64,000 nucleotides of DNA from NCBI RefSeq assembly GCF_006345805.1, contig NC_043020.1, forward strand, positions 18,042,001-18,106,000, written 5' to 3'. The position numbers and the translations under genes were made by a program. The first letter of the stretch is position 1. Each line of letters begins with the position of its first letter. Below, one piece after another: positions 1-42,000 of this stretch. Below the pieces are notes generated by a model that searched no databases, was not told the DNA's origin, and saw only the letters and a list, made by a program, of their open reading frames with translations. The DNA comes from Octopus sinensis. Lineage: Eukaryota.

Positions 1-1452
1 AACAAGAAAAGACTGACAGTTAATTTAAAATTTTAGCTCTGTAGTTTTCATCAGACTAAATCATATATATATAAAGTTGTTACATCAGTGTTTCCATGCC
101 AACATGCATTAGAGTAATGGGGAATATAGCATCTTCCCACATGCCTAAAAGCTTTTGTGATGTAGTCTTTAACACATTTCTCTACAACAAGGTGTCCATA
201 AATTATTTTTACAACCTCCGCAATTTATTGGATCTATTACAGTTGAAATCCATAATCAATTTCTTTGCATGTTAAATAAATATCATTGAAGTTTTAAGAT
301 GTGTACTTTGTTTTGATATTGGTTTCTAATTTTTGCACAAGGCCAGCAATTTAGGGGGAGGGGTAAGTTGATTACTTCAACCCCAGTGTTCAACTGGTAC
401 TTACTTTATCAACTCCAAAAGGATGAAAGGCAAAGTCAACCTCAGCACAATTTGAACTCAGAACATAAGGACTTTGTTTTAATATTTAAACCACTGCAGG
501 ATAGAGTTTTAATATGATTGCAATATTTCAAGGTGACAACCTAGCAGAATTGTTAGCACATCAGGCAAAATGTTTTGCAGCATTTTGCTTATCTTTATGT
601 TCTGAGTTCAAATTCCACTGAAGTCGACTTTGCCTTTCATCCGTCTGGGGCAATAAAATAAGTACCAGTTAAGTACTGGGGTTGATGTAACTGACTCACC
701 CTTCCCCCAAAATTGCTGGCCTTGTGCCAAAATTTGAAACCAATATTTAAATCCCTTTCATTTGTCTTTAAAGGTGTTTATTATTTCCTTATTCTTCAAA
801 TTGTAAATGGACATTCTGTATTTACTCTTTTACTTGTTTCAGTCATTTGACTGTGGCCATGCTGGAGCACCACCTTTAGTCGAGCAAATCGACCCCCAGA
901 ACTTATTCTTTGTAAGCCTAGTACTTATTCTATCAGTTTATTTTGCTGAACCGCTAAGTTACAGGGACGTAAACACACCAGCATCGGTCGTCAAGCGATG
1001 ATGGGGGGGACAACCACAGACAGAAACATATACACACACACATACATACATATATATACAACGGGCTTCTTTCAGTTTCCATCTACCAAATCCACTCACA
1101 AGGCTTTGGTCAGCTTGAGGCTATAGTAGAAGACACTTGCCCAAGGTGTCACGCAGTGGGACTGAACAGCCAATCTTTTCTCATCTTTTTACAAACAATA
1201 TACAGTCATAAATACCGACCAACTTTATATTATAGACTACACTTGTTTCCAAAAAATAACACCATTGGCAAGCAAGTGATATTAGTCTCAGAGTGTTTTA
1301 CTAGTGCTTTAGTCATTGAGTCACATTAGCAGATTTTCTTGAAGTTAAGTTGACATCATCTAAATGAACACTCTTGGTGATAGTGGTCTGGAGTTGTGAG
1401 TCATAACAGATATTTTATGCTGATTTATTCCTTGTGATTCTCTAACTGTTCA

Positions 1453-1583
1453 CTAATTCATACGCATGCATTGTGTTGGTTGGTTTATTAGCTTATTAGC
1501 ATCCACAGCTTCGTTGGTCACAGAGCTCTCTCTTCCTGGCACAGTAGTAATAATAACTACTGTTGGCTGATGACAAATTTGGT
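1453..1583 (-). CDS. Possible terminal exon DQICHQPTVVIITTVPGRESSVTNEAVDANKLINQPTQCMRMN*
   Basis: ttttgtgcatcag|AC; phase 1 fits 7161; non-repeat sequence; no homology recognised. Confidence 0.25.
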
Positions 1584-1700
1584 CTGATGCACAAAATTTT
1601 ACAATAGACATGCGTGCATTTATATATGTGTACATGAGTATTTCATTACATAAGCAACAATGTGCACATGCATATATACACACACACATGCATATATATA

Positions 1701-2340
1701 TCATCATCATCATCGTTTAACGTCCGCTTTCCATGCTAGCATGGGTTGAACGATTTGACTGAGGACTGGCAAACCAGAAGGCTGCACCAGACTCCAATCT
1801 GATCTGGCAGAGTTTCTACAGCTGGATGCCCTTCCTAACACCAACCACTCCGAGAGTGTAGTGGGTGCTTTTACGTTCCACTGGCACGAGGGCCAGTCTG
1901 GCGGTACTGGCAACGGCCACACTCGAAAATGGTGCTTTTTACGTGCCACCTGCACAGGAGTCAGTCCAGCGGCACTGGCAACAACCTCGCTTGAATGTTT
2001 TGTTCACGTGACACCGGCACAAGTGCCAGTAAGTCGATGCTGATAACGATCACGCTCAAATGGTGGTTTTTACGTGCCCACCGGCACGGAAGCCAGACAG
2101 CTGCTCTGGCATTGATCCCGCTTGGATGGAGCTGTTAGTGCTCCACTGGCACAGGTGCCAGTCATCGAATTTGGTTCAATTTTGATTTCACTTGCCCCAA
2201 CAGGTCTTTGCAAGCAGAGTTTAGTGTCCAATGAAGGGAGGTTGGCATGGGTGCCAGTAATCGGATGTGGTTCAATTTTGAATTCAATTTCGATTTCACT
2301 TGCCTCAACAGGTCTTCGCAAGCTGTTCCCATTGATTGGT
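1701..2340 (-). mobile_element. SINE/LINE-tail family C with (ATG)n tail (other copies near 8210, 11965, 14578, 16262, 31685, 63370)
   Basis: On minus: ggttggtgttaggaagggcatccagctgtagaaac...ggaaagcggacgttaaacgatgatgatg; internal duplication at about 2165-2325. Confidence 0.75.
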
Positions 2341-2576
2341 GCAGGTACATACAGGGCTGTATATGCAGGCAAGTACTAGTCCATGGAAGTTGCATCTCTC
2401 AATGAAAAAATGAATTGAAACATGACGACCTGTCCAACTCATGCCAGCATAGCAAGTGGAAATAAAATGACCACACACACACGAGCACGCGCACACACAC
2501 ACACACAGAAGATGAATAGGACTGGCTTTTCTGATAAATATTCCACTTTAATAATTATATGTTAACACCTAATGGT

Positions 2577-2958
2577 TTACTCTTACTTGTTTCAGTCATT
2601 TGACTGTGGCCATGCTGGAGCACTGCCTTTAGTCAAGCAAATCAACCTCAGGACTTATTCTTTGTAAGCCTAGTACTTATTCTATCGGTCTCTTTTGCCG
2701 AACTGCTAAGTTACAGGGACGTAAACACACCAGCATCAGTTGTCAAGCGATGTTGGGGGGACAAACATGGACACACAAACACACACACACATATACGACA
2801 GGCTTCTTTCAGTTTCCGTTTACCAAATCCACCCACAAGGCTTTGGTTGGCCCGAGGCTATAGTAGAAAACACTTGCCCAAGGTGCTATGCAGTGGGACT
2901 GAACCCGGAACCATGTGGTTGGTAAGCAAGTTACTTACCACACAGCCACTCCTGCGCC
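2577..2958 (-). mobile_element. tRNA-derived SINE family A (most abundant; dozens of copies, e.g. 818, 19355, 25797 on minus; 3672, 45983, 57620, 61326 on plus)
   Basis: Head ggcgcaggagtggctgtgtggtaag...ggttccgggttcagtccc (A/B-box-like), CORE-like caccttgggcaagtgt, internal (TA)/(TG) tract, tail actgaaacaagtaaaagag. Confidence 0.85.
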
Positions 2959-3847
2959 TATGGTTAATTAACATCTAATTATTAAAGAGGAAAAATTATC
3001 AGAAAAGCCCCTCCTATTTATAAGTACGAGTATGACTATGTAGTAAGAAGTTTGCTTCCCAACCATGTGATTCTGGGTTCAGTTCCACTGCATGGTACCC
3101 ATGGCACCCTGGCAAATGTCTTCAACTATAGCCTTAGGCTAACTAAAGCCTTGTGAGTGGAATTGGCAGACGGAAGCTGAAAGATGACCATCGTATATGT
3201 GTATTTGTGTTTGTCCCTCACCATTGCTTGACAACAAGTGTTGTTATGTTTATGTCCCTGTGACTTAGTGGTTTGGCAAAACAAAACCAATAAAGTAAGT
3301 ATCAGGCTTAAATAACAAAAGAACAAAAAGTACTGGAGTCAATTCCTTGGATTAAAAATTCTTCAAAAGCAGTGCTCCACCATAGCCATAATCAAATGAC
3401 TGAAACTATATATATATATATACATACACATGTGTGATCATTATCTTTTGCCCGTTTCACTCATTGGAGAGTGGCCATGTTGAGGCATCGCTTACAAGGG
3501 CTTAGTCAAACAAATCAACCCCAATACTTATTATTTTTTTTTTTGAAGCCTAGTACATAGTCTATCAGTTCGTTTTGGTGAACTGCTAAGTTGCAGAGAT
3601 GTAAACAAACCAACAGTTGTTGTCAAGCAGTGATGGAGGGGACAAACAAAAGCACAAATATATACATATATAGGTGCAGGAGTGGCTGTGTGGTAAATGG
3701 CTTGCTTCCCAACCACATGGTTCCAGGTTCAGTCCCACTGTGCAACACCTTGGGCAAGCGCCTTCTTCTATAGCCTCGGGCTGACCAAAGCCTTGTGAAT
3801 GGATTTGGTAGACAGAAACTGAAAGAAGCCCATCATATGTATGTATG

Positions 3848-3882
<35 letters not shown>

Positions 3883-3990
3883 TTGTCCCCCCAACATTGC
3901 TTGACAACTGATGCTGTTGTATTTATGTCCTGGGGTCGATTTGCTCGACTAAACAAATAAAAGAATATATATATATATATATATATACAC

Positions 3991-4191
3991 CAGTGGTTTT
4001 CAACCAGGGTTCTGCCAGTACAGTCCAAGGGTTCCGCAAGGAGTTACAAAACTGCTAAAATCGGCAGTAATTTTTAATTGTCCTGTGCAGATATGTGTGC
4101 ATAAGACTATTAAATTATTGCACAGGGGTTCCTCAAGCCAGTGGAATGTTTCCTTGGGGTTCCGCTCCAGCAAAAAGTTTGAAAAGCACTG
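3991..4191. mobile_element. hAT-type MITE
   Basis: TIRs CAGTGGTTTTCAA / TTGAAAAGCACTG; imperfect 8-bp flanks atatacac/atatatac. Confidence 0.7.
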
Positions 4192-4938
4192 ATATATACA
4201 CACACACACACACATATGATGGGCTTCTTTCAGTTTCCATTTACCAGATTCACTCAGAAGGGTTTGATCAGTCCACAGTTGTAGAAGACTATTGCCCAAG
4301 ATGCCTTATAGTAGGATTGAACCTGAAACTATGTGGTTTCCACACTACCATGCCAGCTTTCATTAGAGATCTACTCAGTCAGAACTGAGATGTGGCTAAA
4401 CTTCCACTCTTCACTATCCCTACCTTGCTAGTGTGGAAATACATATTACGACTTTAGACTCAGTCACTGCTCCAGACACAAACGGTTTTAATTTTTATTT
4501 TAAATCATATTGCACATTGGATTCCTACATTCTATAATTTCTAGTATAATCCACCAAACTAGCTTAGAGTGTTCCTGGCAGGGAGACCAAAGCAAGGTAG
4601 CGGTTATCTTTATGTACAAGAACGAGGGAAGTAACTCATCATGATCATCGCCATAATAATAATTGTTTCAAATTTTGGTACAGGGCCAGCTATTTCGGGG
4701 GTGGGGATAAGTTGATCATATTGACCCCAGAGTTCAACTGGTACTTATTTTATCAACTCTGAAAGGATGAAAGGCAAAGTCGACTCTAGAAATATTTGAA
4801 CCCTGAACATTAAGCTGGAAGGAATGCTGTTGTGCATTTTCCCTGCATGCATGTATGTATTTGTATGTATGTATGTGTGTGTGTGTATGTATGTATGTAT
4901 GTATTTGTATGTATGTATGTATGTATGTATGTATGTGT

Positions 4939-5157
4939 ATATGATGTGTTCTGAATTTATGGAAAGAAATCCCATAAAATGCAACAATTCAGTTAAAAAT
5001 TGTTTCGTCCAGAGATATATCTCTATTTCTCTGTATGAAACGATCGTGTGTATGAATTAAAACTCCCTTATATATTTTAACAACTTCTCTTCTCCATTTT
5101 TATCAAAATTGTTGAGTTTTATTGGATTTCTTTCCATGAATTCACAACACACCATAT
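4939..5157. mobile_element. MITE with ~50-bp imperfect TIRs
   Basis: atatgatgtgttctgaatttatggaaagaaatcccataaaatgcaacaatt versus its reverse-complement match at about 5108-5157. Confidence 0.7.
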
Positions 5158-5291
5158 CCAAGTGTTATTTTCATATTCACAAATTTACGCCTGTAAACTA
5201 CCAACAAAATATAAAGAATCAATATTAGAAATCATTTTTGGAAACCACCAAATTAACGTATGAATCAAAATTCAACCTTTTTACACACACA

Positions 5292-5506
5292 CGAGGGGGT
5301 TCTAAAAGGTTCCTGGCTTTAAGGGTATTACAAAAGGCCTGGTTAGAGGCCCTACCTTCTGAGTTTTTTTTACAAGGATTAGGAAAACTAAAGGGCAGCT
5401 GCAATATGTTAATCTGAGAGGGGATTATGTTTGGATAAAATCCTAATTAACTGATCCTCCTGTATTCTCTTTTACTCAAAGCCAGGAACTTTTCAGAACC
5501 TCCTTC
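5292..5506. mobile_element. Tc1/mariner-type MITE
   Basis: cgagggggttctaaaaggttcctggcttt / aaagccaggaacttttcagaacctcc inverted ends. Confidence 0.6.
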
Positions 5507-5712
5507 TATACACATATATATGTGACAGGCTCTTATTCAGATTCTCTCTACCACATTTAGACACAAGACTTTGGTTAGGCCAGGGCAATAGCAGAAAACA
5601 CTTATCCATGGTGCTGTGAAGTAGGACTGAACCGGAAACCGGGTTGTTTGGAAGCAAACTTCTCAACCACATAACCCTACTTTGACTATATATATACACA
5701 CATTTATATGTA

Positions 5713-5749
<37 letters not shown>

Positions 5750-5849
5750 TAGTCCAACTCATGCTAGCGCGGAAAACGGACATTAAACGATGATGATGAT
5801 ATATATATATGAATATATATATATGTATTTATATTTGTGCGTGTTTATT

Positions 5850-5880
<31 letters not shown>

Positions 5881-6648
5881 TATATATATGTATGTATATA
5901 TATATGTATTTATATTTGCGTGTATTTATATATATATATATATAAGCTGTCAGATGAGTAACGCATGAGGCTACAATTAATTATACGACATTAAGTACTG
6001 CCTTTATTCAGGGAAACATTGTACACGGCCAACGTTAGAATTTATACAGACAACAAAGACATCCATCTACAATAGCAAACATCAACTGACATTTAAGAAA
6101 TATGAACAAATCTATAATAAAAATCTATTACTACGACCGACAGTGCATTAAAAGAAACTCTATTTAACCATATATTTGGCTTCGTTCCAACTGCAGTATG
6201 TTGTAAAGCCAGGAAGCTCAATCCAAAAGAGTGAGGTCATATGTTTGTGCATCTTCACACACACACACATACAACCATTTCAATTCCAACCTGTTTAAAA
6301 CCACCTCTAAGGTTATTTGATACAAAACGCTTGGTTCTGAAAGTGTTTATATCTAAATTAAAACTTTTAGCCGTGATTTTATGTGAGAACTTTTCATTAA
6401 GTCATAGAAGCAGATGTGGCTGTGTGGTTGTTCTTTTACTTGTTTCAATCATTTGATTGCAGCCATGCTGGAGCACTGCCTTCAAGGTTTTTGCTTTTTT
6501 TTAGTTGAACCGATTGACTGCAGGACTTATTCTTTGTGAGCCTAGTAATTATTCTATCGGTCTCTTTTGCCAAACAGCCAAGTTATGGGGACATAAACAC
6601 ACCAACATCAGTTGTCAAGCAATGGAGTTGGCACTGGGGAAAACATAG

Positions 6649-6684
<36 letters not shown>

Positions 6685-7160
6685 GATGGGCTTCTTTCAG
6701 TTTTTATCTACCAAATCCACTCACAAGGCTTTGGTTGGCCTGAGGCAATAGTAGAAGACATTTGCCCAAGGCGCATTTTGCCCAGTATGCTAAAGACTCT
6801 GCCAGCTCGCTGCCAATTTTGGCACAAGGTCAACAATTTTGGGGGAGGAAGTAAGTCAATTACATCAACCCCTATTACTCAACTGATACTTATTTTATCG
6901 ATCCTGAAAGGATGAAAAGCAAAGTTGACCTTGGCAGAATTGAAACTCACAACGCTAACCATTTTGCCTGGTGTGCTAACAATTCTACCAGCTTTCCCCT
7001 TTATTCCACATATCAGTATGTTGAATAGTCAGCCAGTGGACATTTTGTTAATACAGGACATCGGCAAATGTCATCACTGCCCAATTGATGTCAACACAAA
7101 AACATGTGGAGATACACAGATATATTGACATACGAATGCAATAGACTTCTGCAGACTTAC

Positions 7161-7228
7161 CATTTACCATATTTCGCTTACAAGTTTTGACCAGCCTGCG
7201 GGCATATAGGAGACACTTGTCCTGGGTG
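7161..7228 (-). CDS. Possible exon of an unidentified minus-strand gene: TQDKCLLYARRLVKTCKRNMVN
   Basis: Strong acceptor tttgttctggctttgatctcccttcacag and donor ATG|gtaagt; phase 2 to 1. Confidence 0.35.
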
Positions 7229-7790
7229 CTGTGAAGGGAGATCAAAGCCAGAACAAACATACTTATTGTTTTTTTCTTCATATTCTTCTTCAATATATTA
7301 TATTCCTGTGTTTTGTTACAGTGAATCCATGGAAATCTCAGGATGTAAACCTTTCATTAGAATATTCATGTTTGTACATTTGTTTCACATCTGTTTGTCG
7401 ATGCTAGCATGCATTAGGCATATATTGTAAGACACTGAGACTTTGTCTTACAACCAGATACCTGTCCTGGCACTAACCATTACCTGTTTTTCAAGTAAAG
7501 AACTTTACTCAGCTTCAAAAGCACAGAACAACTGCACTTGTCTTAAAACCAGACACAAAACCAAAATTGTGTCCAATTTGTTAAAACATTGTGACATCGT
7601 AAAGTGCTTCCCTTTTGGCTCTCTGGTAATTACTAATTATGATGTAATGTCAGTCGTTAATGATAACATTTACCTGTATTATCAGAACAGCTGAGACATA
7701 ACTACTGTTATTTCCTTAAGTGCTTTGGGTTCTTTTTGTCTTTTGTATTAAAATATAATCACAGAAAAGAAAAACCCTAGTAAAGCCAGG

Positions 7791-7861
7791 GGCCATTTAG
7801 CTTAATGGTAGAGCACTCAGCCAGTATCTGAGAGGGATAGGCTCGATTCCAACAGATGCCA
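7791..7861 (+). pseudogene. tRNA-Thr(AGT)-like relic or tRNA-headed short SINE
   Basis: A box TAGCTTAATGGTAGAGC, anticodon arm CTCAG-CCAGTAT-CTGAG, B box GGCTCGATTCC, T7 run at 7871; acceptor and T stems mispaired. Confidence 0.55.
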
Positions 7862-8985
7862 GCTGGCAACTTTTTTTGAAAGGCAGTGCTCCAGCATGGC
7901 CCTGGCCTCTGGCTGAAACCAGTGAAAAAATAAAAGAATGTAATAAAAGTCAAAATTATAAGGGCAAAATATTTTTGTAAGTGGAGAAGTTTAACCCCGA
8001 GACATTCATATTACTCTGTCAAATGTAATGTTCATTTATTCAGATCATTTTGAATTAATCATGCATTATCTTGTAGCTTTGAGATTTCAATGATATTGAA
8101 GTGATTGTAATAATGACAGCTATTTCTCTGCCACACTCTAATCGTTCATCATCTGATACTGGACCACCTCCTCCTCTGTCTCTTTGTCACCCTCTAACCT
8201 TTCATCCTTGTGAGATGTAAAAAGCATCCAGTCCACACTGTAAAGTGGTTGGCATTTAGAAGGGCATCCAGCTGTAAAAGTCATGCCAAAACTGACCTCA
8301 CCTGTGCTAGTGTCATGTAAAAAGCACTGAGTTCACACTGCAGAGTGGTTAGTGTTAGGAAGCCATAAAAACCCTGCCAAATCAGAGCAGCATAGGGTAC
8401 TTTTCTACTTGGCCAGCTCCTGTGAACCATCCTACCCATGCATGCATGGAAGATGGATGTTAAACGATGATGATGATAATGATGAATACTGTTTATAAGC
8501 ATACATACATACATTTGGACGACAGTTCAAAGTTGTTTATACGGAGTAACTTTACATTAAGGAGTGGAATGTACAATTTCCTGTAATTCAGACCACCTCA
8601 TGGTCCCAGCAGACAAAATGGGAATCAGGGCTACCCCAGAGGATGACGGAGGAAATGTGTTGGAAACAGCCACTTTGACTCACGAGGCATGCACTTGTGG
8701 ATAGCCATCTCTGCATACACCTGCTCATCTAGCAGTGAGTGTGGATATGGTCCAGGGGTCCAAGAACACTGGCGGTCTCCACTGCCATACACTCAACCAT
8801 AAACAATACAGTGCTCTTGCTGTCTGCAGTGGTGAACTGTTTAACCTGTAGTTCTTAATTACAAGTTAGTAAAATTGTGGCCATCCACACATACAGGCAT
8901 GTCCTTTATGGTTATGTTCCCCATTTCCTCTCTCAACCAAGAGGTCCTTGTCTTGCAAGCTTGAGAGTACTGGTGCCACATAAAA

Positions 8986-9240
8986 AGCACCTGTGCCAAA
9001 GTCAGGTAGGAAGCACCTGTGCCAATGTCAGGTAGAAAGCACCTGTGCCAATGTCAGGTAGGAAGCACCTGTGCCAATGTCAGGTAGGAAGAACCTGTGC
9101 TGGTGCCAAGGTAGGAAGCACATGTGCCAATGTCAGGTAGGAAGCACCTGTGCCAATGTCAGGTAGGAAGTACCTGTGCCAATGTCAGGTAGGGAGCACC
9201 TGTGCCAGTGTCAGGTAGATAGCACCTATGCTGGTGCTGC
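8986..9240. repeat. 26-bp minisatellite, about 10 units
   Basis: Unit GCACCTGTGCCAATGTCAGGTAGGAA. Confidence 0.9.
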
Positions 9241-10564
9241 ATAAATAGTACCTGTGCTGATGCCACATAAGAAACACCTAGTGCATTCTGTAAGGTGGTT
9301 GGCACTAGGAAGGGTACCCAGCCATAGAAACCTTGCGAAAACACAACTGGAACCTGGTGCAGCTCTCTGGCTCGCCAACACCTGTCAAACTATTCAACCC
9401 ATACCAGCATGGAAAACAGATGTTAAATGATGATGATGATGATCTATCTTCACTGAGATATTCAGGTTGAAACTATGTAGAGTACACTGCTTCTGAAAAT
9501 CACCAAACCAATATTCTGCTTTTGTTAGTAAGTACCCAATCAAGTCAACCAAACTTCTCTTGATGCTTACTCAGGAATGTTATTAAGAAAATGTCTTTAA
9601 CTCTTAACATCCTCTATGATATGAATCTACATGACAACACATGTATGTCAATTTTATGCCACTTGAAGCTGCCCAAATAAAGCCACTCTTGTTTATTATT
9701 ATTCATTTATATAATGAAATTATTGTATACAGTGCTCAGGTGCACCACAACTTGTCAGAAAGTGCATATAAAGTACATGCAGTAATGTAGAAATGTCTGG
9801 AAAGCGAACAATGTATGAGTGGAAAGCGATCTCTAATCTAAGGGAGAAAACTTCTAGAATCCTTTCTATCATTTATTTACATTCTGCATTGAGAGGTGAT
9901 AGCTCTGGTACTATGGACATATGATTAGAATAACCAGCAGGAGATCTAGAGGTATATAAATATATATACATACAATGGGCTTCTTTCAGTTTCCGTCTAC
10001 CAAAGCCACTCACAAGGCCTGAACCAGGAACCATGTGGTTGGGAAGCAAACTTCTTACCACACAGCCATGCCTGTGCCTATATATGTAAATATATATAGT
10101 CTTTTATTCTTTTATATGTTCCAGCCTTGAGGCTGTTGCCATGCTGGGGCACTACCATTATATGTATGTAAATATACATATATACATGAAGTGGACACTT
10201 TATAAAGTGTACTAGACATCAATTCCTGACACATTTCACGTTTCTGCCTGAAAAAGCTCATAACATCTGCAGTAGGGTCTTTTTGTCCTAAGCCGGACTG
10301 GCTAGTCATACAAGATTTCATGATAGTATTTTCTAATTGAAGGGATGGTCTTCATCTGTAAAAAATAGCAATCACTATATATTATTATTGTTATTATTAT
10401 TATTATTTTTTTTTTATTGCCAGGTGAAGTGCTTAGTGGTATTTCATCTTTCTTTATGTCCTGAGTTCAAATTCTGCTGAGGTTGACTTTGCCTTTCATC
10501 CTTTTGGGTCGATAAATTAAGTACCAGTGAAACACCAGAGTCGATGTAATCAACTATACCTCTT

Positions 10565-11924
10565 CCCCAAAATTTCAGGCCTTGGGTTCTTAGTAGAAAG
10601 GATTATTATTATTACCAGTATTATTTGTTTTTTTATTTCTCAGAATGCTTAGTCTTGTTTGTTCTGGTAGATTCTGTGAGAGTGGAAACCAGCCTGTTGT
10701 CAGCGGTCTCACAGGATCTCTTTCCACACATTATAGGCTTTGATACTTGGTTGTTTAATATTATTATTATTATCATTATTATTATTATTATTATTATTAA
10801 AGGTGGCGAGCTGGCAGAATCATTAGCATGCTGGATGAAATGCTTACCGGTATTTCATCTGCCACTACATTCTGAGTTCAAATTCTGCTGAGGTCGACTT
10901 TGCCTTTCATCCTTTCAGGGTCGATTAAATAAGTACCAGTTATGCAGTGAGGTCGATATAATTGACTTAATCCATTTGTATGTCCTTGTTTGTCCTCTCT
11001 GTGCTTAGCCCCTTGTGGGTAGTAAAGAAATAGGTATTTCACCTGTCTTTACATTCTGAGTTCAAATTCCACTGAGGTCAATAAAATAAGTACCAGTTGA
11101 ACACTGGGGTCAATGTAATCAATTCATCCCCTCCCCACTAAAATTGCTGCCCTTGTAGTAAAATCTGAAATCATCATCATTATTATTATTGTTAAGGCAG
11201 TGAGCTGGCAGAATCATTTACGACTAGTCCCCTCCCCCAAAATTTCAGGCCTTGGGTTCTTAGTAGAAAGGATTATTATTATTACCAGTATTATTTGTTT
11301 TTTTATTTCTCAGAATGCTTAGTCTTGTTTGTTCTGGTAGATTCTGTGAGAGTGGAAACCAGCCTGTTGTCAGCGGTCTCACAGGATCTCTTTCCACACA
11401 TTATAGGCTTTGATACTTGGTTGTTTAATATTATTATTATTATCATTATTATTATTATTATTATTATTAAAGGTGGCGAGCTGGCAGAATCATTAGCATG
11501 CTGGATGAAATGCTTACCGGTATTTCATCTGCCACTACGTTCTGAGTTCAAATTCTGCTGAGGTCGACTTTGCCTTTCATCCTTTCAGGGTCGATTAAAT
11601 AAGTACCAGTTATGCAGTGAGGTCGATATAATTGACTTAATCCATTTGTATGTCCTTGTTTGTCCTCTCTGTGCTTAGCCCCTTGTGGGTAGTAAAGAAA
11701 TAGGTATTTCACCTGTCTTTACATTCTGAGTTCAAATTCCACTGAGGTCAATAAAATAAGTACCAGTTGAACACTGGGGTCAATGTAATCAATTCATCCC
11801 CTCCCCACTAAAATTGCTGCCCTTGTAGTAAAATCTGAAATCATCATCATTATTATTATTGTTAAGGCAGTGAGCTGGCAGAATCATTTACGACTAGTCC
11901 CCTCCCCCAAAATTTCAGGCCTTG
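10565..11924. repeat. Tandem duplication with a 670-bp period
   Basis: 10565-11254 recurs at 11235-11924; I noticed one substitution (ctacAttc/ctacGttc); ORFs 10625 and 11295 are duplicates. Confidence 0.95.
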
Positions 11925-12459
11925 TGCCATTAATAGAAAGGATCATTATTATTATTATTATTTCGTTAGGAAGGGCATCCAGCCATAGAAACACTGCCAG
12001 ATCAGACTGGGCCTGATGCAGCCTTCTGGCTTCACAGACCCCAGTTGAACCGTCCAACGCATGCTAGCATGGAAAGCGGACGCTAAATGGTGATGATGAT
12101 GATGATGATGATTATTATTTTTCCTTCTTTCTTAAAATTTTCTTCCGTTTCTCGTCGAGTGTTTTCCGTACACCTAGGGCAGAGAAGCTCATTGTATGCA
12201 TTCCTAGATTACACACGCAAATTCACAGGTAAAATATGTATTAAAAAAAATTAATATATAAATAAATTCACGAATGGATGTTGTTTTCACAGCGATAATG
12301 CTTTTCTCAGTACATGAACCATTCCAGTTAACACGATTTCTTGCACTTCCTGTAGGAATGGTATGCCTGGTATCATTTTCTAATAGATTTCAGTACCTAT
12401 TTTTTATCATTCCTAGAGATCCTACAATCACTGGTACTGTAGTCGCGTTGAGATGCCAC

Positions 12460-12489
<30 letters not shown>

Positions 12490-12493
<4 letters not shown>

Positions 12494-12653
12494 TAAAACA
12501 GTTTGGTTAAAGTTTCACAGGCTTCTGACAGAAACCCATCTCATTTAGGTTTAGATTACTGAATTCTGTAATTTAAGCCTGAAAGAGATGGGTTTCTGTC
12601 AGAAGATCATACAACTTTAAGTCACTTGGAGTCGAATCAAACTGTTTTAAATA
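12490..12653. repeat. Foldback palindrome
   Basis: Outer arms tatttaaaacagtttg/caaactgttttaaata; inner arms cttctgacagaaacccatctc/gagatgggtttctgtcagaag. Confidence 0.85.
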
Positions 12654-12930
12654 ATAATACTTGTAACCAATGCTAAATATGTTGAATGCCTTTTGCATTT
12701 GTCAACTCATTCTTATGTAGGCGCAATGGCCCAGTGGTTAGGGCAGCGGACTCGCGGTTTCGATTCCCAGACTGGGCATTGTGTGTGTTTATTGAGCGAA
12801 AAACACCTAAAAGCTCCACGAGGCTCCGGCAGGGGATGGTGGTGATCCCTGCTGTACTCTTTCAAAAGGCGGTGCTCCAGCATGGCCGCAGTCAAATGAC
12901 TGAAACAAGTAAAAGAGTAAAAGTAAAAGA

Positions 12931-12961
<31 letters not shown>

Positions 12962-13214: not shown

Positions 13215-13251
<37 letters not shown>

Positions 13252-13659: not shown

Positions 13660-13694
<35 letters not shown>

Positions 13695-15147: not shown

Positions 15148-15185
<38 letters not shown>

Positions 15186-32400: not shown

Positions 32401-32759
32401 TGATCCTGGTATTTTGTTGGTTACGTCGACAAAGGTTCCAGTTGATTTGACCAACAGAACAGCCTGCTCATGAAATTAACATGCAAGTGGCTGAGCACTC
32501 CACTGACATGCGTAGTTCTCAGGGAGACACAGTGATACATAGAATGTGACAAGGCTGGCTCTTCGAAATACAGATACAACTATTTTTTGCCAGCTGAGTG
32601 GACTGGAGAAAAGTGAAATGAAGTGTCTTGCTCAAGCACCAACATGCTGCCAGGAATCAAACTCATGATCTTACAATCGCAAGCCAAGTACCCTAACCAC
32701 TAAACCACCTGCATTCACATGTGTGTACTAATCGTAAATATGTTGGCATTCATATAAAC

Positions 32760-33097
32760 GAGAGGTTCTCAACCTTTTTTTACCTATGGATCCTTTTGAT
32801 TACTGCTTTATTCTGGTGGACCCCCATGGGAATTGTGAAAGAAGTTCCTATAAAACTAGTTTTTAAACATCAAATGGCTATTTTGTTTTTCACACATTCA
32901 CTTGTGTAGGCACTTATGTAAAACATTAAGGAAAGAAACCGAGCTGTTTTCTTACAATACATACAACAAAGGCAACATTTTTTCAGGGGCCCTTAAAGTA
33001 CTATTGTGGATCTCCAATTTGCTACTTTGTTGTGTGGACCCCCAGAAATCTTATATGGACCTTCAGGGGCCATATGGACTTCAGTTGAGAAACACTG
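32760..33097. mobile_element. hAT-type MITE (decayed left end)
   Basis: gaggttctcaacc...gttgagaaacactg termini. Confidence 0.5.
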
Positions 33098-33123
33098 ATG
33101 TAAACAGTGTCCTTTGTTAATAG

Positions 33124-33172
33124 ACATGCATGAAAGCATGTGGGGTAATTATCACAACTATCTGGAAACAAG
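33124..33172 (+). CDS. Putative exon (D)MHESMWGNYHNYLET(R)
   Basis: cctttgttaatag|AC...ACA AG|gtgagg; phase 1 to 2, which conflicts with the open frame of the next exon. Confidence 0.3.
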
Positions 33173-33404
33173 GTGAGGGTTGCTCATCACGAAAAGCAAC
33201 TAGCCATAGGAAAATCTGCCTTTAAAAGACTCATCTGACCCATGCAAGCATAAAAAAGGAGACAGTAAAAGTGATGATGATGATGATGCCAACTGAACAC
33301 TACTTGATTGTCATTGAGATGAAATTCACTGAAAGCATTTTGATGTAATTCAGGCCAAATCACATGGTGGCAGCCAACCCTGACTAACCTATTTTTTTTC
33401 TTAG

Positions 33405-33469
33405 GCATTTGTGTACCTAGAATTCTATGATTCCACAACTGCTGATAATTTGCCAGACTTTTCCTTCAG
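33405..33469 (+). CDS. Putative exon AFVYLEFYDSTTADNLPDFSF(R)
   Basis: Branch-point-like TGACTAAC (33381-33388), ttttttttcttag acceptor, CAG|gtgaga donor; only frame 0 is stop-free. Confidence 0.5.
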
Positions 33470-34095
33470 GTGAGACACAAACATCATTTTGTATAACTGA
33501 ACAGTTCCACTATAGACATGCAGAAACACAGACATACTCATTTGGTTGACATTGAGTTTCCCATACCAGCATGGGTTAGCTGAATCATCATCATCACTGT
33601 TCCATGTCTGCCTTCCATGCAGGCATGGGATGGACGGTTTGACAAGAGCTACCCAGGTAGAAGACTACCCCAGGCTACTGTGTCTGTTTTGGCAGGGTAT
33701 TTACGGCTGGATGCTCTTCCTAACATCAACCACTCCACAGTGGACTGAGTGCTCTTTATGTGGGACCAGCACAGGCAAGGTCAGTTTTGGCATGGTTTTT
33801 ACAGCTGGACGCCTTTTACAGTGTGGACTGGATGGATACATTTTACATGGAACAGTGAATACATATTGAAATATTGTTTACAATCTGGATGCCCTTTCTG
33901 TTTGCTAACCCTTACCGGTTTTTTAACTAATAGAGATTTTAACCCCTTCATCAGTATTGCAAAGATGTGAAATAAAGAGCACCTTACCTGAAAACAAAAG
34001 TTGGCATCAGGAAGGGTATTTGATCATAAAATACTACCTCAATGAGATTCGTCCAACACACACCAGCATGGAAAACACAAACATAGAAATTATAA

Positions 34096-34320
34096 GGCGG
34101 TGAGCTGGCAGAAACGTTAGCATGCTGGGCGAAATGCTTAGCGGTATTTCGCCTGCCATTATGTTCCGAGTTCAAATTCCGCCAAGGTCGACTTTGCCTT
34201 TCATCCTTTCGGGGTTGATAAATTAAGTACCAGTTACGCACTGGGATCGATGTAATCGACTTAATACTTTTGTTTGTCCTCTCTATGTTTAGCCCCTTGT
34301 GGGCAATACAGAAATAAGAA
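34096..34320 (+). mobile_element. tRNA-derived SINE family B (other copies near 10802, 11472, 19850, 29112, 62745, 62962)
   Basis: ggcggtgagctggcagaaacgttagc...gttccgagttcaaattcc, conserved gactttgcctttcatcc...gataaattaagtaccag core; often beside (ATT)n. Confidence 0.85.
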
Positions 34321-34642
34321 ATTATGATGGTGAAGACACTGCTTCTGCCAAGAACTTGCCTGGTGAACTAGCAGAATCATTAGAACACTGGACAAATACC
34401 ACGTGACACTGGTTCTGGGTCTGTGATCTGAGTTCAATTACAGCCAAGGTCACACTGTACCTTTTATCTTTCTAAGGTCAATAAACTAAAAGTACCAACA
34501 TCAATTCTCCCTCTCAATATTGATTGTTCTCTCTTTGGTTATTATCATTTAAATGAGAATGTCAGTTAGTTTCCACACCCAGTAAAAGAGAAGGCTTAAG
34601 CCAGAGCTGGCAACTTGCTGCCATGAAACTAGCTTTCTTCAG

Positions 34643-34716
34643 AAACCACCCAAAAAATTCAAACCAAAGAAACCTTTGTAGTCCAGAGGCAGACAAGGTG
34701 GATATGGGAGAGTTTG
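34643..34716 (+). CDS. Putative exon (R)NHPKNSNQRNLCSPEADKVDMGEF
   Basis: gctttcttcag|A...TTT G|gtatgt; phase 2 to 1 continues the 33405 exon. Confidence 0.4.
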
Positions 34717-35734
34717 GTATGTGGTGCAGCACAGAACAGCTTATGGATATTTTCCCTTTAAATATAACCAACCATATTTTTTAAGATTATCATTACAATG
34801 CAAAGGATAATGTATTTTGGTGTTATTTAACCCCCGGTCAATTTGGAACAAACAGGTCTATGATCAATAACATGCTAATTGTAACTGTCACATCGTCTTT
34901 TTAAGAGTATAAATGACTAATCAAATGTGTTACTTTTTTTATATCAAAGATGGCAGGCTATGATTTATGAGAACTTACTGCTTATTTTAGCAAGGTGACT
35001 TCTTTGGCTCCAATACTCTTTAGAAGAAGATAAATTAATGTACAACTACTAGTTGCTAAGCTTTACTTTACAGAAAGGGAACCATTTCACAGAATAAGTG
35101 ACCGAGTTTCCTTACCTGATAAATCTAAAAGCAATGAGGGAGCCTCAACACAGTTGTCCTCAAACTGGCTAACATAGCAGTCAAACCTCCCTCAAAGTCA
35201 TCCTTATTACTTTAATAAAACAAGGAAAGGACATACGAGATGATGTAGTCCTAGATACCTCTAAAAAGATGTGAGAGTCACAACTGGAATGCAGGACTGG
35301 TCACAGGTCTGCTCTAGTAAGGATGAGTCGTGTCTAAACATGTTGCCAGTAAAATGCTTAAGTGCTGAGAAAGTACAGAAAAAGCAAAACATTTTCTTAT
35401 GGGGGTAGAAGTTAAAGAAAGGAAACGAGTCCCAAACGAAACAATGAATGACCGCAGAAATAAAAACACACATGTACAAACATGCACACACACACAGACT
35501 TTAAAATCTTATATCAACATTAATGAAAAATCCACGAATCTGAAATGTGTAAAGATAAGAGGTATGTTAACAATCAATGCACTACAACTACACATTGCAA
35601 ATAGACACACACAAAATATACACACATATGCGTGCATGTGTGTGTGAATATATACACATATATATATATGCACATACACACACATGCACTCTGACATAAT
35701 AACATACGCACAAAAAATAAGATGATGTTTGGTT

Positions 35735-35740
35735 TTTATT
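35735..35740 (-). promoter_or_regulatory. Candidate polyadenylation signal AATAAA closing a putative ~3.3-kb 3' UTR (about 35715-39015)
   Basis: tttatt on the plus strand; on the minus strand it is followed ~20 nt later by a U/GU-rich tract (ttattttttgtgcgtatgtt). I saw no SINE copy between about 35400 and 45970. Confidence 0.4.
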
Positions 35741-38228
35741 TAAACGTTTTAATTATGACTTTTTTTCTTTCTCCTTCAATGCTTTTGTAAAGTGTTTCAA
35801 GATCGAGGGGGGAAGGGGAGGAGGGGAAAGGGAGAGAGAGAGAGAGAAAAAATCCGACATCTTCAAATACAGATGTTTATAGTCCAACTTTCACAATGCA
35901 TTGACACATGAAATATGGTTCTTGTTGGGGGGTGGGGTGTTCCTTTAACACATACACACACACACACAGACACCTTAGCTCTCTTCACAACACTTGTGTG
36001 TGCGTGTGTGCGTGCGTGTGCGCATGCATGTGTATGTATCTATGTTTAAGCCTTGTAATATGTGTGTGTGTGTGTGTGTATAAAAATGTTGTGCATTGTT
36101 AGGAATGGGTAATGCAGAGAATTATAGTGACACAGAAAGAAAGATTAGGGGGTCGAGGAAAGGAGGGACAGAGCTCAATTATTGTAGTGATAATGATGAG
36201 GATGGGAAGGAAGGAACTATATATATATTCATATATATATGTTATACCATATTGATGAAGACGTAATCCATGGCGCTATGGGCTTCTTCAGAAAGGGTCC
36301 TTGTTTGAATTTTGTTTTTTGAAATGTCTCTTTATTTGTTTAGTTGAGTTTTCATTTTTTTTTTTTTTATCCTCTTGCCAATAGGGGAAGAAAGAAAAAA
36401 AAAAAGAAGCTTAATGTTGTATTGATATATCGAATAGTTGTGCAACCTGATTATCTGTGATGTAGGGTGGGGGGGGGTCAGAGTGTGGGATGGGACAAGA
36501 AGGAACAGACCAGTTAATAATTTGTCCAAATAGGTAGAGGAGTGGTGGTGGTGGTGGTGGAGGCGGGGAGGGGGAAAACAAGTTTAATGACCAAAGAGAG
36601 ATTGACAAGACACGTACATAATGACAGACAAATTTTCAACAGAAATTGGGGGGGGTGGAAAAAAAAAAAAAAAGGTTTCAGGGCTGAGGGTTTAGTTTTT
36701 TGAAATTTGAGTCAAGGAGAGTGACTGGTAAACAAATAAATAGGCCAATCTATCGGATGAAAAACAATGGATACAGTTTGGAAGTTTCAATGTTGCTTGG
36801 TTTCTTTGTTTATTTTGTTCTTTCAATTCATTTTCTTTTTGTCTTTGTGATGAGGAATTATTTATTTGTTTGTTTGTTTCATTATCTTTTTTTTTTGTTT
36901 TTCTCGCTTTTTATTTCTTTCCATATTTTTGTTTGTTCGTTTGTTTTTTTGTTGTTTTTTTTCTTTTTTGGCTTTTTATTTTTTTTTCCTAGTTTCACAG
37001 AACACTTTGGCCATTTCAATGAGGCAGAAGAATAATGAAGATAGCGATAGGAAGGAAAGGAAAAAAAAAAAAAAATTTTTTTTTTTTAAATCAAAAAGAT
37101 TGTGAGAGATGGTGAGAAATACTTTTACAGAATGAGGCATGTTCACATCAAGCAAACCAAAAAAATACTCGCACATACATAACAAACAAGCTAAGAGATA
37201 TCCATGAAAAATAATCCATTCGATTGAGTCACAACTAATCCCATAATCAACTAGCATGTAGTACGCGAAGAGAGAGAGAAATTTTCAACTTGACCCTTAT
37301 AGCAAAGGCTTGTTTTTATAACAAAGTATCTGTCTTTTACAGAGAAAGAAAAACAGGAACACAACCACATACCTATGAAACAACTGAGTCTTCAAAATAC
37401 TATATATATATATATATATATTCTTCACCACTCACAGTCACAGTATGGCCAGATTATATACATATTATATATACATACATAAGATAGCTATCTAAATCGT
37501 GCCAAACATCAGACATTTTATATATACATATATATAATATATATGCATATACACACACGCGCGCGTGACTTTAGCTCTCTGATACATAATGCAATAAAGT
37601 GCTCCCTCGATGAGCTGTAGTGGTTAAGCATTCAACTGCAATTGGAACATCAAATGCAGGAGTTCCAAACAACCACAATTGTAAAATGTACAGGGGAACA
37701 AATGATATAAACTTGTGTTTATTGTAATTTCTCCTACACACACACACATATATATATAGATAATATATATATATATATACACACAGATGGATAGACAGAG
37801 GGATACATACATGCATACACACACACACATACATACATACATACACAATATTTGCAGGCAAAAAGATACTAGATATCCCAAAAGTGTACATTATCGACCA
37901 ACTTTGAGCTGACTGGAGGACATGCGCCACACCCCTAAACTACTATTTCTACAAAGGTGATCCTTCTTTCTACAACAGCAGTCTGCTTAACAGACAAGTC
38001 AACTGAATCCATTGTTTCTGGTGGGCAAACAACAACACAGCAAAACCCTCTCCAAAGGGACAAAGAAAGCAGCTAGCCATTAAGTAAGGGTCAAGCAAAA
38101 TAGATGACTTCCAAAGTGAACAAAAACATCTCTGGAAGGATCTAACAGAGAAAAATGACAAAACAAAATCCTTTTTAAATGAAATCATAATAATAACTTT
38201 GACACTGGCATGGAGCCTCATTTTATAG

Positions 38229-38272
38229 AGGAAGGGAAATTTGTGATATTCATGCCTTTCCCCGAGGCATAG
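38229..38272 (+). CDS. Possible terminal exon (E)EGKFVIFMPFPEA*
   Basis: ctcattttatag|AG GAA...GCA TAG; phase 1 fits 34716; weak support. Confidence 0.2.
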
Positions 38273-39037
38273 GTGACATAAATGAAATGGTTCGCAAACG
38301 GGAATCAAAAGCGAACCATTTCTACAAAATATGCAATGATTACAATACAAAGTGTTAGAAGTATCCGACTGTCTGCCAGGTATTGTCTAAACTGTACTTT
38401 ATATTGCTTGAGGTATGCATCTGTATGTATGGAGTAAAAATGTTATGTGTGTATGATGTATGTATGAGTAATAATTAATGCTTCATATGGGTGTGTAAGG
38501 GTCTCCTCTTTTTTTAAAAAAATTATTTGAAATTGAACTAAACCTATTATCATAAACTGTTTGTGATGCCTGAGGGTAGCAATATTATAAGTTGTGATGC
38601 CTGAGGGTGGTGTGTTATGGGTTGGACAATAAAGTGTGAATATCTCCAAGGGATCTGGAGGGATTGTCTAATATCCAATCAGCTTCTAGAATCAGCTGGC
38701 AGACTTTCTTTCAATGAGCAATGTCAGTTAAGCCCCAAAAGAGAGTATACACATTTGGTTTGTTGGTGCCAAGTGTAGGGACCAATTTAAAAGAAAATAG
38801 CTGGCATGGACTATAGAAGGGTGTTTCTGCTCTTTTCTTGGTCAGAGAATTTTGGAAAGAAAAGGAGTTTTAAAAAAAAAAAGTTTTAAATAAAATAAAA
38901 TAAACTGCTTTCACATCCCAATCAAAATTTTTCTCCACCAGTCACCCGAATGCTGATTGATCAGAAATGGCAGAAAAAAAATGATAAAAAGTTTTAAAAG
39001 AAGATCAAGATGATATCAAAACAATAGTTTGTAATAC

Positions 39038-42000
39038 CTGGGTGTTTCTGTGATGTCTTCAGGTTTGCCACAGAAAGGTTCAGTGACCTTAGGTATACTG
39101 AGACCATATTTTGTTGCTGTATGACAGATTAAGTCTTTGCTAGGTGGACGATCGCGTGGTGTTAATACCAGAGACTCTTTGCCAGCGACTGGCTGAGGAC
39201 TGGCATTTTTAAAGTGATCGTCCTGTCTCTCAGAGCCTATACTTTCATTGCTACCCACATTAACTTTTTGAGATTCCTTTGTAGCTGCTTGATTAGTCTG
39301 GTTGGGTTCACTAGTGTCAGCCGACTCCTTCTCTTTTGATGAATTACCAGAAGATTTGCTTGATTGTAAAACACCTGTTTTATGGCTTACGGACAAATCC
39401 AATGTTGTTATGTCGGAGTTAAAGACATCATCTTCAGCTGCTAATGCTTTCTTACCCTGTTCTACTTCTTCGCCAGATCTACTGATTTCTCCTTGCTTAG
39501 AAGTGGTGATACACTGCCCACCATTCACCTCTCTTTGCGAACTAACATCATTGAGTGGACCTTCTTCACAAATGGTATTTTGAGATCCAATATGCAAATG
39601 AGACTCAGTTGTGTTCTTAATTGATTCTGAAGCTGCTTTAGAAACCCCATTTTCCTGATCTGCAGTTTCTGATATTTTCTTCACAGTTTCCTTTCGTTGT
39701 GCAGATTCTACCATTTCACTGTTACACGTAACACCTGTCTGCTTTGCAGTAGCTTCTTCCGTTTCTTTGTTCAATTCACAGATCAATTGTGTAGTCTGCA
39801 AAACTTGATGTTCAGTTGATTTCTCTGTCTCCTCTAAATTCTCACCTGACTCAATTCCAGGACTAGCTGGTAGCTTATTCGCAATATTTTTAAACTCAAC
39901 TTCTGACGACTCAGTTGAGTCTTTGTGACAAACCTCTGATACTGTTTCTCTCTCTTCAATCAAAGTATTTTGTGTTTCTTCGTTGTCTATTTTATCCATG
40001 AGATATCCTACATCCATATCAGCTGCATCACAATTAGAATAACTATTTAATCTGTCACTACTGGTTTCTGCTGGGCAATTAAATGAATAATTGCCCATCT
40101 GGTAGGGACGAGGGGAAGTATTAGTTTGTTCTTCAGCTCGACTAATTTCGTCTTCAGTGCAATTTGATGACTGATTGCTCCCTACAAGCCTACTATTAGC
40201 TTGAGAAGTTTCTATACGAAACTGTACATTAGGGAAACCTTCAAGTTCACTCGATTCTTTTTGTTGGTTGGAATTAACGAGGGAGAAATTTCGAGTAGCG
40301 GGGTTAAGAGAAAAAGTAGCTTCCAAATCATTATACTCAGGTTTGCAATCAACTTTAGATTTACTACCAGATCTTGCACGTGGAATGAGCTTCACAACAG
40401 CCGTCTTTACAGCATAGGGTGATTTATCGGTAGGAGCGTCATTTTTCCAAGACAACAATGTTGGAATGGGCGGAGACTTGTTTTCTGCAGCTTCATCTTG
40501 CTTCACAACTGGTACTATTATATCACTGGTTGGCTCTGTTTCAGATCCACCCAACGATGTAAGACTAGGGGATTTGGCTGATTCACAGGAGCGCTGTGTC
40601 TCTACACTAGACAAAGGGGTCTCGTAGATCGAATCTAAGGAAGTTTGAGACAGGAAGTTAGGCTGAGACAAAACGCCATCGGTCGAGTCAAGCGAGACGT
40701 CGTCAGGATTCCCGTCAACTACTGGCAGAGGTGCATTTTCTTCAGGGGATAGTGGCTGGGGCGGAGAGGTATCACCTTTTTCAGAAACAGGAGGAGAAAA
40801 TAATGCTAACTTTGACATAACATCATTGTAGGTTTTCTTAAAATCATCAGAAGAATCTGTGTATGTGGAGAGCGTTGATAATTTAGCCAATGTTGCTTGA
40901 TGCAACAAAGACAAACTGTTCATCAGTTTTCCATGGTTTATTGCAACTGCACGTTTTCTGCGATGCCTCGTAGTCAAGAAAGCAACACCTAGACGTTGGT
41001 TAGGAGTGAGGTTTCTTTTACGTTTGTTCTTGCCTCGGGACTTTATTTCGAATTCTTCTTCGTAGCTTATGGTTGCATCTTCCCCTGAACTAGAATCTGT
41101 ATTTATCATTTGGGAGTAGCCATCGTCGTCAAGTGACATAAGCAAACCAGTATCATTGGGCTCATCAAGAGTTCCTGCAATAGCCACTCCCAAATATTCA
41201 TCTTGAAAATAGTCACTAGCTGGTCGGTCATAGAACATGCTACCAGAATGCTGAGTGAACAGGGAAAGACGTCCATTATCATCACTTATTGGACTTGAAT
41301 AACTCATTAGAGGTACTCCACCACGATACTTATTTTTATCAGCTAGTTTAATTCTTTCCCATCCAATATTCTCAATACGGCCAGGTATTTTGTTACCAAC
41401 ACAACTACGATGTGGAATGCCATCACGTGTAGCAAGAAATTCACTGGCCTTCACCGTTTTACTTGGCAGCTTTAACTTCTCCAACTTCACCACTAGAGAC
41501 CTCTGGTGTGCTCTTTTGTTGACAACAAGACAACAAACATTTCCGGAAGAGGCTTTATGATCAAAGTTATCGTGGCTGTCATCGTCGTCGTCGTCATCGT
41601 CACCATCGTCATCGTCATCTGCGTCAACATCATCATCATCATAGCCCTCTAAGTGAGGATCATAGATATCTGTGAAATCCATTGTGGAAAAGTTCATGGT
41701 GCGTTTTGAACCATCTTGGCTTCCATTATCAGAACCCAGTTTTCGCTTGCGCACCTGCTGGGAATCTTGGCTGTTTGAAGAGGATTGAATAGAAGAGTTA
41801 ACGGTGAAACTTTGTCCAGTTGGTGTATTACTGGGTTGCCACAGGGATGAACCAGATGTTGGTGGGGGGTCATGAGGTGAACCAATGTTAGTTGGAAAAG
41901 GAGACTGATTATCTTTACAGGAACTCAATGGACTAGGTGAAGAATTGTTGGAGGAATTTGGCCCGACTTCAGGTTCTGTTATGTTATCGATTTTGGGGTG

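What the first reader, a model, noticed from the sequence alone, without database searches (positions are those of the whole stretch)
1..39038. REV3L-like gene stops short of its polymerase domain: no catalytic exons seen in the 39 kb downstream
Seen: ten phase-consistent exons spaced 0.6-4.4 kb apart end at donor 39037. I then found no minus-strand exon resembling what follows in human REV3L (EIGGRLL, second REV7 motif, DPEFDPI, LDFQSLYPS, YGDTDS, Cys clusters). Established: Pol zeta needs those domains, and vertebrate NEXMIF/KIAA2022 and AHDC1 share sequence with the REV3L middle region without having a polymerase. Inference: (a) an intron >39 kb holding a nested antisense gene, (b) a polymerase-less REV3L paralog or fission product, (c) a split or trans-spliced gene, or (d) a misassembly. 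My scan was by eye and could miss a short exon.
Basis: partly seen in the sequence, partly recalled or inferred. Interest (0 to 1): 0.78.

Follow-up and report, generated by a model that had tools for sequence, protein, structure and literature searches.

The report
Ordinary octopus REV3L, cut by window
This is the middle of an ordinary, already annotated octopus REV3L (DNA polymerase zeta) gene about 200 kb long.

Summary
The ten minus-strand exons are real and phase-consistent, and the donor after 39038 is real. No exonuclease, polymerase or zinc-finger exon lies in 1-39036.

The gene does not stop there. An eleventh exon of 40 nt at 18091-18052 (minus strand) encodes (R)EHGGRNLRLQCNL, the octopus counterpart of human 'EIGGRLL'. 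It has a good acceptor and donor and the right phase.

Exons 1-11 spliced together (2596 aa) match residues 223-2818 of Octopus sinensis XP_029650343.2 exactly. That protein has 4068 aa and its gene spans 200,696 bp. It carries POL3_N, REV3_N, DNA_pol_B_exo1, DNA_pol_B and zf-C4pol domains, with LDFQSLYPS, YGDTDS and both Cys clusters.

The window is collinear with the O. bimaculoides locus along its whole length (about 91% identity in introns). There, every exon after the 40-nt one lies 51.5-87.5 kb past the big-exon donor. The window holds only 39 kb past it. By synteny the next exon sits about 5 kb left of window position 1.

There is no paralogue, gene fission, trans-splicing or misassembly here. 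The gene has long introns, and the window ends before its catalytic exons. Already known; low interest.

The parts
63845..63923 (-). REV3L exon, first one inside the window (MFIDYNLYGMNLLNVNHVKFRRRQTK; starts at residue 223 of XP_029650343.2)
   Evidence: Acceptor tttttcag|ATG and donor AAG|gtaagc. Part of the exact 2596-aa match to P0016.
62423..62561 (-). REV3L exon 2 of the window (139 nt)
   Evidence: Splice sites and phase; tblastn of P0016.
60722..60819 (-). REV3L exon 3 of the window (98 nt; ...STCELEVDIVAADILNRLDVN)
60035..60139 (-). REV3L exon 4 of the window (105 nt; NPGLTALWNDEKERRR)
57267..57351 (-). REV3L exon 5 of the window (85 nt)
   Evidence: Donor TGG|gtaagt.
55976..56070 (-). 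REV3L exon 6 of the window (95 nt)
   Evidence: also present in the O. bimaculoides model P0001.
51426..51566 (-). REV3L exon 7 of the window (141 nt)
48973..49174 (-). REV3L exon 8 of the window (202 nt)
47207..47337 (-). REV3L exon 9 of the window (131 nt)
39038..45710 (-). Ultra-long REV3L exon 10 (6673 nt, 2224 codons). It encodes the disordered middle region, with a DUF4683-like stretch, the DVMSKLALFSPP motif, and a stretch LVLTPRDRPPSKD that resembles the human REV7-binding motif as I recall it (from memory, not tested).
   Evidence: Open frame 39016-45771. Borders. Weak DUF4683 match, E=0.0084, below the Pfam cut-off. 97.7% identical to O. bimaculoides, with mismatches concentrated at third codon positions (98 against 36 and 21).
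18092..39037 (-). Intron 10, 20,946 nt, rich in repeats. Its first ~1.2 kb (37851-39037) is unusually conserved.
18052..18091 (-). REV3L exon 11, 40 nt. It completes the Arg codon (AG|G) and encodes EHGGRNLRLQCNL.
   Evidence: tblastn E=0.007 with P0007 and 3.7e-4 with P0016. Acceptor ttttgtag|G, donor TTG|gtgagc, phase 2 in and phase 0 out. 97 of 98 nt identical to O. bimaculoides including flanks, against ~91% intron background. Included in the exact substring match.
1..18051 (-). Start of intron 11, which runs off the left edge of the window (28,273 nt in O. bimaculoides)
   Evidence: No match to P0016 residues after 2818. Collinear with L002 down to window 213-472. The next exon in O. bimaculoides lies about 5 kb further on.

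Best explanation
The window is a 64-kb internal piece of the single, intact REV3L gene (catalytic subunit of DNA polymerase zeta) of Octopus sinensis or a sequence identical to it. The gene is on the minus strand and spans about 200 kb.

The window holds eleven exons, not ten. After the 6.7-kb exon comes an intron of 20.9 kb, then a 40-nt exon at 18091-18052, then an intron longer than 18 kb that leaves the window.

The exons for the second half of the protein lie to the left of window position 1. They encode the exonuclease domain, the polymerase domain with LDFQSLYPS and YGDTDS, and the two C-terminal Cys clusters.

Shown: exon structure, exact identity to the annotated protein, absence of later exons from the window, and synteny with O. 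bimaculoides. Inferred: that splicing joins 39038 to 18091 and 18052 to the next exon in vivo. That rests on two gene models, phase, splice sites and conservation, not on cDNA seen here.
For: - Spliced exons 1-11 give 2596 aa with no stop. They are an exact substring (residues 223-2818) of P0016, which is XP_029650343.2 of O. sinensis, 4068 aa.
- The gene on record for P0016 spans 200,696 bp and its product hits PF24055, PF24065, PF03104, PF00136 and PF14260.
- Exon 11 has proper splice sites and phase. It is 97/98 nt identical to O. bimaculoides, against ~91% for the intron.
- The O. bimaculoides model XP_052832126.1 (P0007) makes the same exon 10 to 11 to 12 joins.
- The window is collinear with O. 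bimaculoides CM046624.1 along its whole length.
- In O. bimaculoides, every exon after the 40-nt one lies 51.5-87.5 kb past the exon-10 donor, on the same strand. The window offers only 39 kb.
Against: - No cDNA or RNA-seq junction reads were seen here. Both protein models are computational predictions.
- The DNA left of the window in O. sinensis itself could not be fetched because the gene range was too long for the tool. The position of exon 12 is therefore inferred from O. bimaculoides.
- The exon-10 donor (gtatta) is only moderately strong.
Confidence: 0.96

Rival explanations
1. A polymerase-less REV3L paralogue or fission product: a second gene copy that keeps only the N-terminal and middle regions.
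For: None beyond the absence of catalytic exons from the 39 kb inside the window.
Against: - The exons are identical to the one full-length O. sinensis REV3L model.
- Exon 11 ends in phase 0 at an intact, conserved donor, so it expects a further exon.
- The orthologous O. bimaculoides locus carries the catalytic exons downstream on the same strand.
- The 90% cluster holds only one O. sinensis protein.
Confidence: 0.01
2. A misassembly: the sequence left of about 39 kb was joined wrongly to the REV3L exons.
For: None.
Against: Same order and orientation as an independent chromosome-scale assembly of another species across 1-64000. 69% of 1-39036 aligns, at about 91% identity. Exon 11 sits at the syntenic place.
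Confidence: 0.01
3. A split or trans-spliced gene whose polymerase half is transcribed from elsewhere.
For: None.
Against: In O. bimaculoides the remaining exons follow in cis within 87.5 kb. The O. sinensis gene is recorded as one 200.7-kb range on one contig.
Confidence: 0.005
4. In addition to the full-length mRNA, not instead of it, a transcript that fails to use the exon-10 donor. It would read ...TETPRYYKLLF* and give a polymerase-less isoform, with the conserved 1.2 kb after the donor as its 3' UTR or as a splicing-control region.
For: - Window 37851-39037 is about as conserved as the coding exon, against ~91% for the rest of the intron.
- The read-through peptide RYYKLLF and its stop are identical in a more distant cephalopod contig, L003.
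Against: - In L003 the similarity ends about 60 nt past the donor, as expected for ordinary splice-signal conservation.
- There is no AATAAA or ATTAAA within 1.3 kb of the donor.
- There is no RNA evidence.
Confidence: 0.08

Closest known systems
Octopus sinensis LOC115223813, protein XP_029650343.2 (UniProt A0A6P7TG80, DNA polymerase zeta catalytic subunit)
   Same: Residues 223-2818 are identical to the window's spliced exons 1-11. This is the same gene.
   Different: Nothing differs. The window simply lacks the exons for residues 1-222 (to the right) and 2819-4068 (to the left).
Octopus bimaculoides REV3L locus, CM046624.1 from about 19.686 to 19.810 Mb (XP_014783409.1, XP_014783417.1, XP_052832126.1, XP_052832491.1)
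   Same: Collinear orthologue. Exon 10 is 97.7% identical and introns about 91%. It has the same 40-nt exon with one substitution (N to I), followed by exonuclease, polymerase and zinc-finger exons.
   Different: The annotation cuts the gene into four models of 205, 133, 2925 and 685 aa. Intron 10 is 23.2 kb there, against 20.9 kb here.
Human REV3L
   Same: - One ultra-long internal exon encodes a disordered middle region: 4161 nt in human (bioRxiv 10.1101/2020.10.09.333039) and 6673 nt here.
- The exon border falls after '...EPFC..P.D.PE.PR' and is followed by E-I/H-GGR (and human sequence from my memory).
- The catalytic motifs are the same.
   Different: The human protein has 3130 aa, the octopus one 4068 aa. 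The octopus middle exon is about 2.5 kb longer.
NEXMIF/KIAA2022 and AHDC1 (DUF4683 proteins)
   Same: Exon 10 has a weak DUF4683-like stretch (E=0.0084, below the Pfam cut-off).
   Different: Those are separate polymerase-less vertebrate genes. This locus is REV3L itself, joined to its catalytic exons.

Membership tests
REV3L / DNA polymerase zeta catalytic subunit | N-terminal domain (Pfam POL3_N, REV3_N) | tested here: inconclusive
   Only the tail of this domain is in the window (MFIDYNLYGMN...). Pfam gives no hit on the window's exons 1-9 alone. The full protein that contains these exons exactly hits PF24055 and PF24065.
REV3L / DNA polymerase zeta catalytic subunit | Long disordered middle region on one ultra-long exon, ending at ...PR and followed by E(I/H)GGR | tested here: met
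   Exon 10 at 45710-39038 and exon 11 at 18091-18052. Other mollusc homologues end at the same ...PR border.
REV3L / DNA polymerase zeta catalytic subunit | Family-B exonuclease and polymerase domains (PF03104, PF00136; LDFQSLYPS, YGDTDS) | tested here: met
   Not inside the window. Present in the gene product of which the window's exons are an exact part, and in the syntenic O. bimaculoides exons.
REV3L / DNA polymerase zeta catalytic subunit | C-terminal Cys clusters (PF14260 zf-C4pol) | tested here: met
   P0016 and P0015 carry PF14260. The sequences show CPVC...CPQC and CQSCQG...C...C. These lie outside the window.
REV3L / DNA polymerase zeta catalytic subunit | Splicing of exons 10, 11 and 12 confirmed by transcripts | not testable with these tools
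   No cDNA or RNA-seq reads were available. Only two computational gene models and sequence conservation support the joins.
Polymerase-less REV3L-middle-region paralogues (NEXMIF/AHDC1-like) | A gene that ends without family-B polymerase exons | tested here: not met
   Exon 11 has an intact donor in phase 0. The gene model continues for another 1250 aa that include the catalytic domains.

The most novel reading that the evidence does not exclude
The 1.2 kb directly after the big-exon donor (37851-39037) is as conserved between two octopus species as the coding exon. The seven-codon read-through RYYKLLF* is identical in a more distant cephalopod. This could mark a regulated choice between splicing on to the catalytic exons and ending the message there. 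Ending it would give a natural polymerase-less REV3L isoform, or the block could be a control element for handling the ultra-long exon.
Probability: 0.08. Interest if true: 0.4.

Novelty: already known. Interest (0 to 1): 0.05.

Why it matters
It matters little biologically: octopus REV3L is intact and already annotated. The useful lesson is about method. In genomes with introns of 20-30 kb, a 64-kb window often holds only part of a gene. A 40-nt exon between two long introns is easily lost, both by eye and by gene predictors. O. bimaculoides REV3L is cut into four models, and several mollusc models stop exactly at this exon border.

Tried and rejected
- Word-index protein search with the last 487 aa of exon 10 found nothing. 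This was a false negative: proteins 96-100% identical are in the same collection.
- The same tool with exons 1-5 returned only short fragments. These still led to the O. bimaculoides locus.
- Pfam on the window's own exons gave only a sub-threshold DUF4683 hit.
- Open frames on both strands of 1-39036 look like translations of SINE-like and simple repeats, with no gene-like frame. I did not run them through Pfam. I relied instead on the absence of any called gene inside the REV3L range in both octopus annotations.
- Rfam at gathering scores found only one weak tRNA-like hit, which ARAGORN does not call.
- A relaxed Rfam search of the conserved block gave only TG/TA-repeat look-alikes of mir-297 and mir-466, far below gathering.
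- Fetching the O. sinensis DNA left of the window failed because the gene range is too long for the tool.
Full report
**What is in the window**

The window has about 38% G+C, no Ns, and many simple and SINE-like repeats. A 2251-codon open frame lies at 39016-45771 on the minus strand. Upstream of it, at higher coordinates, short open stretches show REV3L N-terminal motifs: FIDYNLYGMN, STCELEVDIVAADILNRLD and NPGLTALWNDEKERRR.

I set the exon borders from the sequence. There are ten exons with AG/GT borders and mutually consistent phases:
- 63923-63845
- 62561-62423
- 60819-60722
- 60139-60035
- 57351-57267
- 56070-55976
- 51566-51426
- 49174-48973
- 47337-47207
- 45710-39038

The last exon is 6673 nt, ends CAG|gtatta, and leaves phase 2.

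**Test of the 'nothing follows' claim**

tblastn with a human REV3L C-terminal sequence typed from my own memory found only the end of exon 10 (39120-39037). It found nothing credible in 1-39036. The same query found the exonuclease and polymerase exons in the O. bimaculoides locus, including VVVLDFQSLYPSIMIAYNYCFSTCLG, so it was able to detect them.

A full HMMER scan with the last 1200 aa of exon 10 found P0007. This is O. bimaculoides XP_052832126.1, 2925 aa and 96% identical. After ...EDITETPR it continues EHGGRILRLQCNL IKDLTPF....

tblastn of that continuation on the window gave one hit, at 18090-18049 on the minus strand: EHGGRNLRLQCNL. The sequence there reads ttttgtag|G GAA CAT GGG GGA AGA AAC TTG AGG CTT CAG TGT AAC TTG|gtgagc. 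This is a 40-nt exon at 18091-18052. Its first G completes the AG left by exon 10 to give Arg, and it ends in phase 0 at a good donor.

**Identity of the gene**

The 90%-identity cluster of P0007 contains P0016. This is O. sinensis XP_029650343.2 (UniProt A0A6P7TG80), 4068 aa.

My eleven exons spliced together give 2596 aa with no stop. They are an exact substring of P0016, residues 223-2818. P0016 continues for another 1250 aa, which include:
- the exonuclease region
- LDFQSLYPS
- YGDTDS
- two Cys clusters

Its gene on record spans 200,696 bp on a 31-Mb contig of GCA_006345805.1. The product hits POL3_N, REV3_N, DNA_pol_B_exo1, DNA_pol_B and zf-C4pol. No other gene is called in that range.

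tblastn of P0016 on the window recovers the exons up to residue 2819 and nothing beyond. No exact 7-mer of the last 1250 aa occurs in any frame of the window. The catalytic exons are therefore truly outside the window but belong to the same gene.

**Where the missing exons are**

The O. bimaculoides locus was fetched as L001, L002 and L004 (CM046624.1, about 19.686-19.813 Mb). It is collinear with the window from 64000 down to about 213, in one orientation:
- introns about 91% identical
- exon 10 97.7% identical, with mismatches mainly at third codon positions

In O. bimaculoides the layout downstream of exon 10 is as follows:
- exon 10 ends at L002:21629
- the 40-nt exon is at L002:44797-44836, so intron 10 is 23.2 kb
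- exon 12 starts at L002:73110, so intron 11 is 28.3 kb
- the remaining exons run to the stop codon, 87.5 kb past the exon-10 donor

Window 213-472 aligns to L002:67632-67886. Exon 12 is therefore expected about 5 kb to the left of window position 1. The window offers 39 kb past the donor, and all exons after the 40-nt one need 51.5-87.5 kb.

**Rivals**

- A polymerase-less paralogue or fission product is contradicted by the exact identity to the full-length model. It is also contradicted by the intact phase-0 donor of exon 11 and by the syntenic catalytic exons.
- Misassembly is contradicted by collinearity with an independent assembly of another species.
- Trans-splicing is unnecessary, because the exons follow in cis.
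- A nested antisense protein-coding gene is not called in either annotation. The open frames in 1-39036 look like repeat translations. I did not run a Pfam scan on them.

**What remains inferred**

I saw no cDNA. The 10-11-12 joins rest on four things:
- two independent computational models
- splice sites and phase
- 97/98 nt conservation of exon 11 with its flanks, against ~91% background
- homology to the human border ...PR|EIGGR, which I know only from memory

The left-flank DNA of O. sinensis could not be fetched.

**Comparison with what is known**

Human REV3L also has one ultra-long internal exon. It is 4161 nt and encodes a disordered stretch of about 1386 aa in a 3130-aa protein (bioRxiv 10.1101/2020.10.09.333039). 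The octopus exon is its longer counterpart. The finding is an ordinary, already annotated gene.

**Side observations**

The first ~1.2 kb of intron 10 (37851-39037) is about as conserved as the coding exon. The read-through RYYKLLF* is identical in a more distant cephalopod contig, but similarity there stops about 60 nt past the donor. Rfam finds nothing there. This allows, at low probability, an intron-retaining short isoform or a splicing-control element.

**Verdict**

Novelty: already known. Interest: 0.05.

Noticed in passing
window 37851-39037 (minus strand, first 1.2 kb of the intron after the 6.7-kb exon): This block is about as conserved between O. sinensis and O. bimaculoides as the coding exon: about 9 substitutions plus 2 small indels in 1187 nt. 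The rest of the intron is ~91% identical. No Rfam family matches, and there is no AATAAA or ATTAAA within 1.3 kb of the donor.
   Followed up: partly
window 39016-39039; L003:4560-4620: Reading through the exon-10 donor gives RYYKLLF followed by a stop. The same seven residues and stop occur in a Logan contig of a more distant cephalopod (SRR19578101; ~69% nt identity in the exon). Similarity there ends about 60 nt into the intron.
   Followed up: partly
L001, L002, L004 (O. bimaculoides CM046624.1:19686156-19812662): The O. bimaculoides annotation cuts one REV3L gene into four consecutive same-strand models of 205, 133, 2925 and 685 aa. Three other mollusc homologues (P0009-P0011) end exactly at ...PR, the border before the 40-nt exon. 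This suggests gene predictors often lose that exon.
   Followed up: partly
tool behaviour: The word-index protein search found no hit for 487 aa of exon 10. Proteins 96% and 100% identical over that stretch (P0007, P0016) are in the same collection. A null from that tool is therefore not evidence of absence for long proteins.
   Followed up: yes
window 7791-7861 (+): An Rfam tRNA hit just above gathering (32.1 bits against 29) that ARAGORN does not call. It is probably a tRNA-derived SINE or a decayed tRNA inside intron 11.
   Followed up: partly
window 10550-10888 and 11196-11558 (+); 8985-9237: The same ~113-121-aa open frame is translated twice, 646 nt apart, so there is a repeated segment there. 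A 26-nt minisatellite (9.5 copies) lies at 8985-9237. About 39% of 1-39036 is repeated elsewhere in the window.
   Followed up: no
P0016 residues 1-66 (outside the window): The O. sinensis RefSeq protein starts 66 residues before the conserved MFSVRIVTADYY start seen in O. bimaculoides P0004 and in human REV3L as I recall it. The extension is hydrophobic and looks like a model artefact.
   Followed up: no
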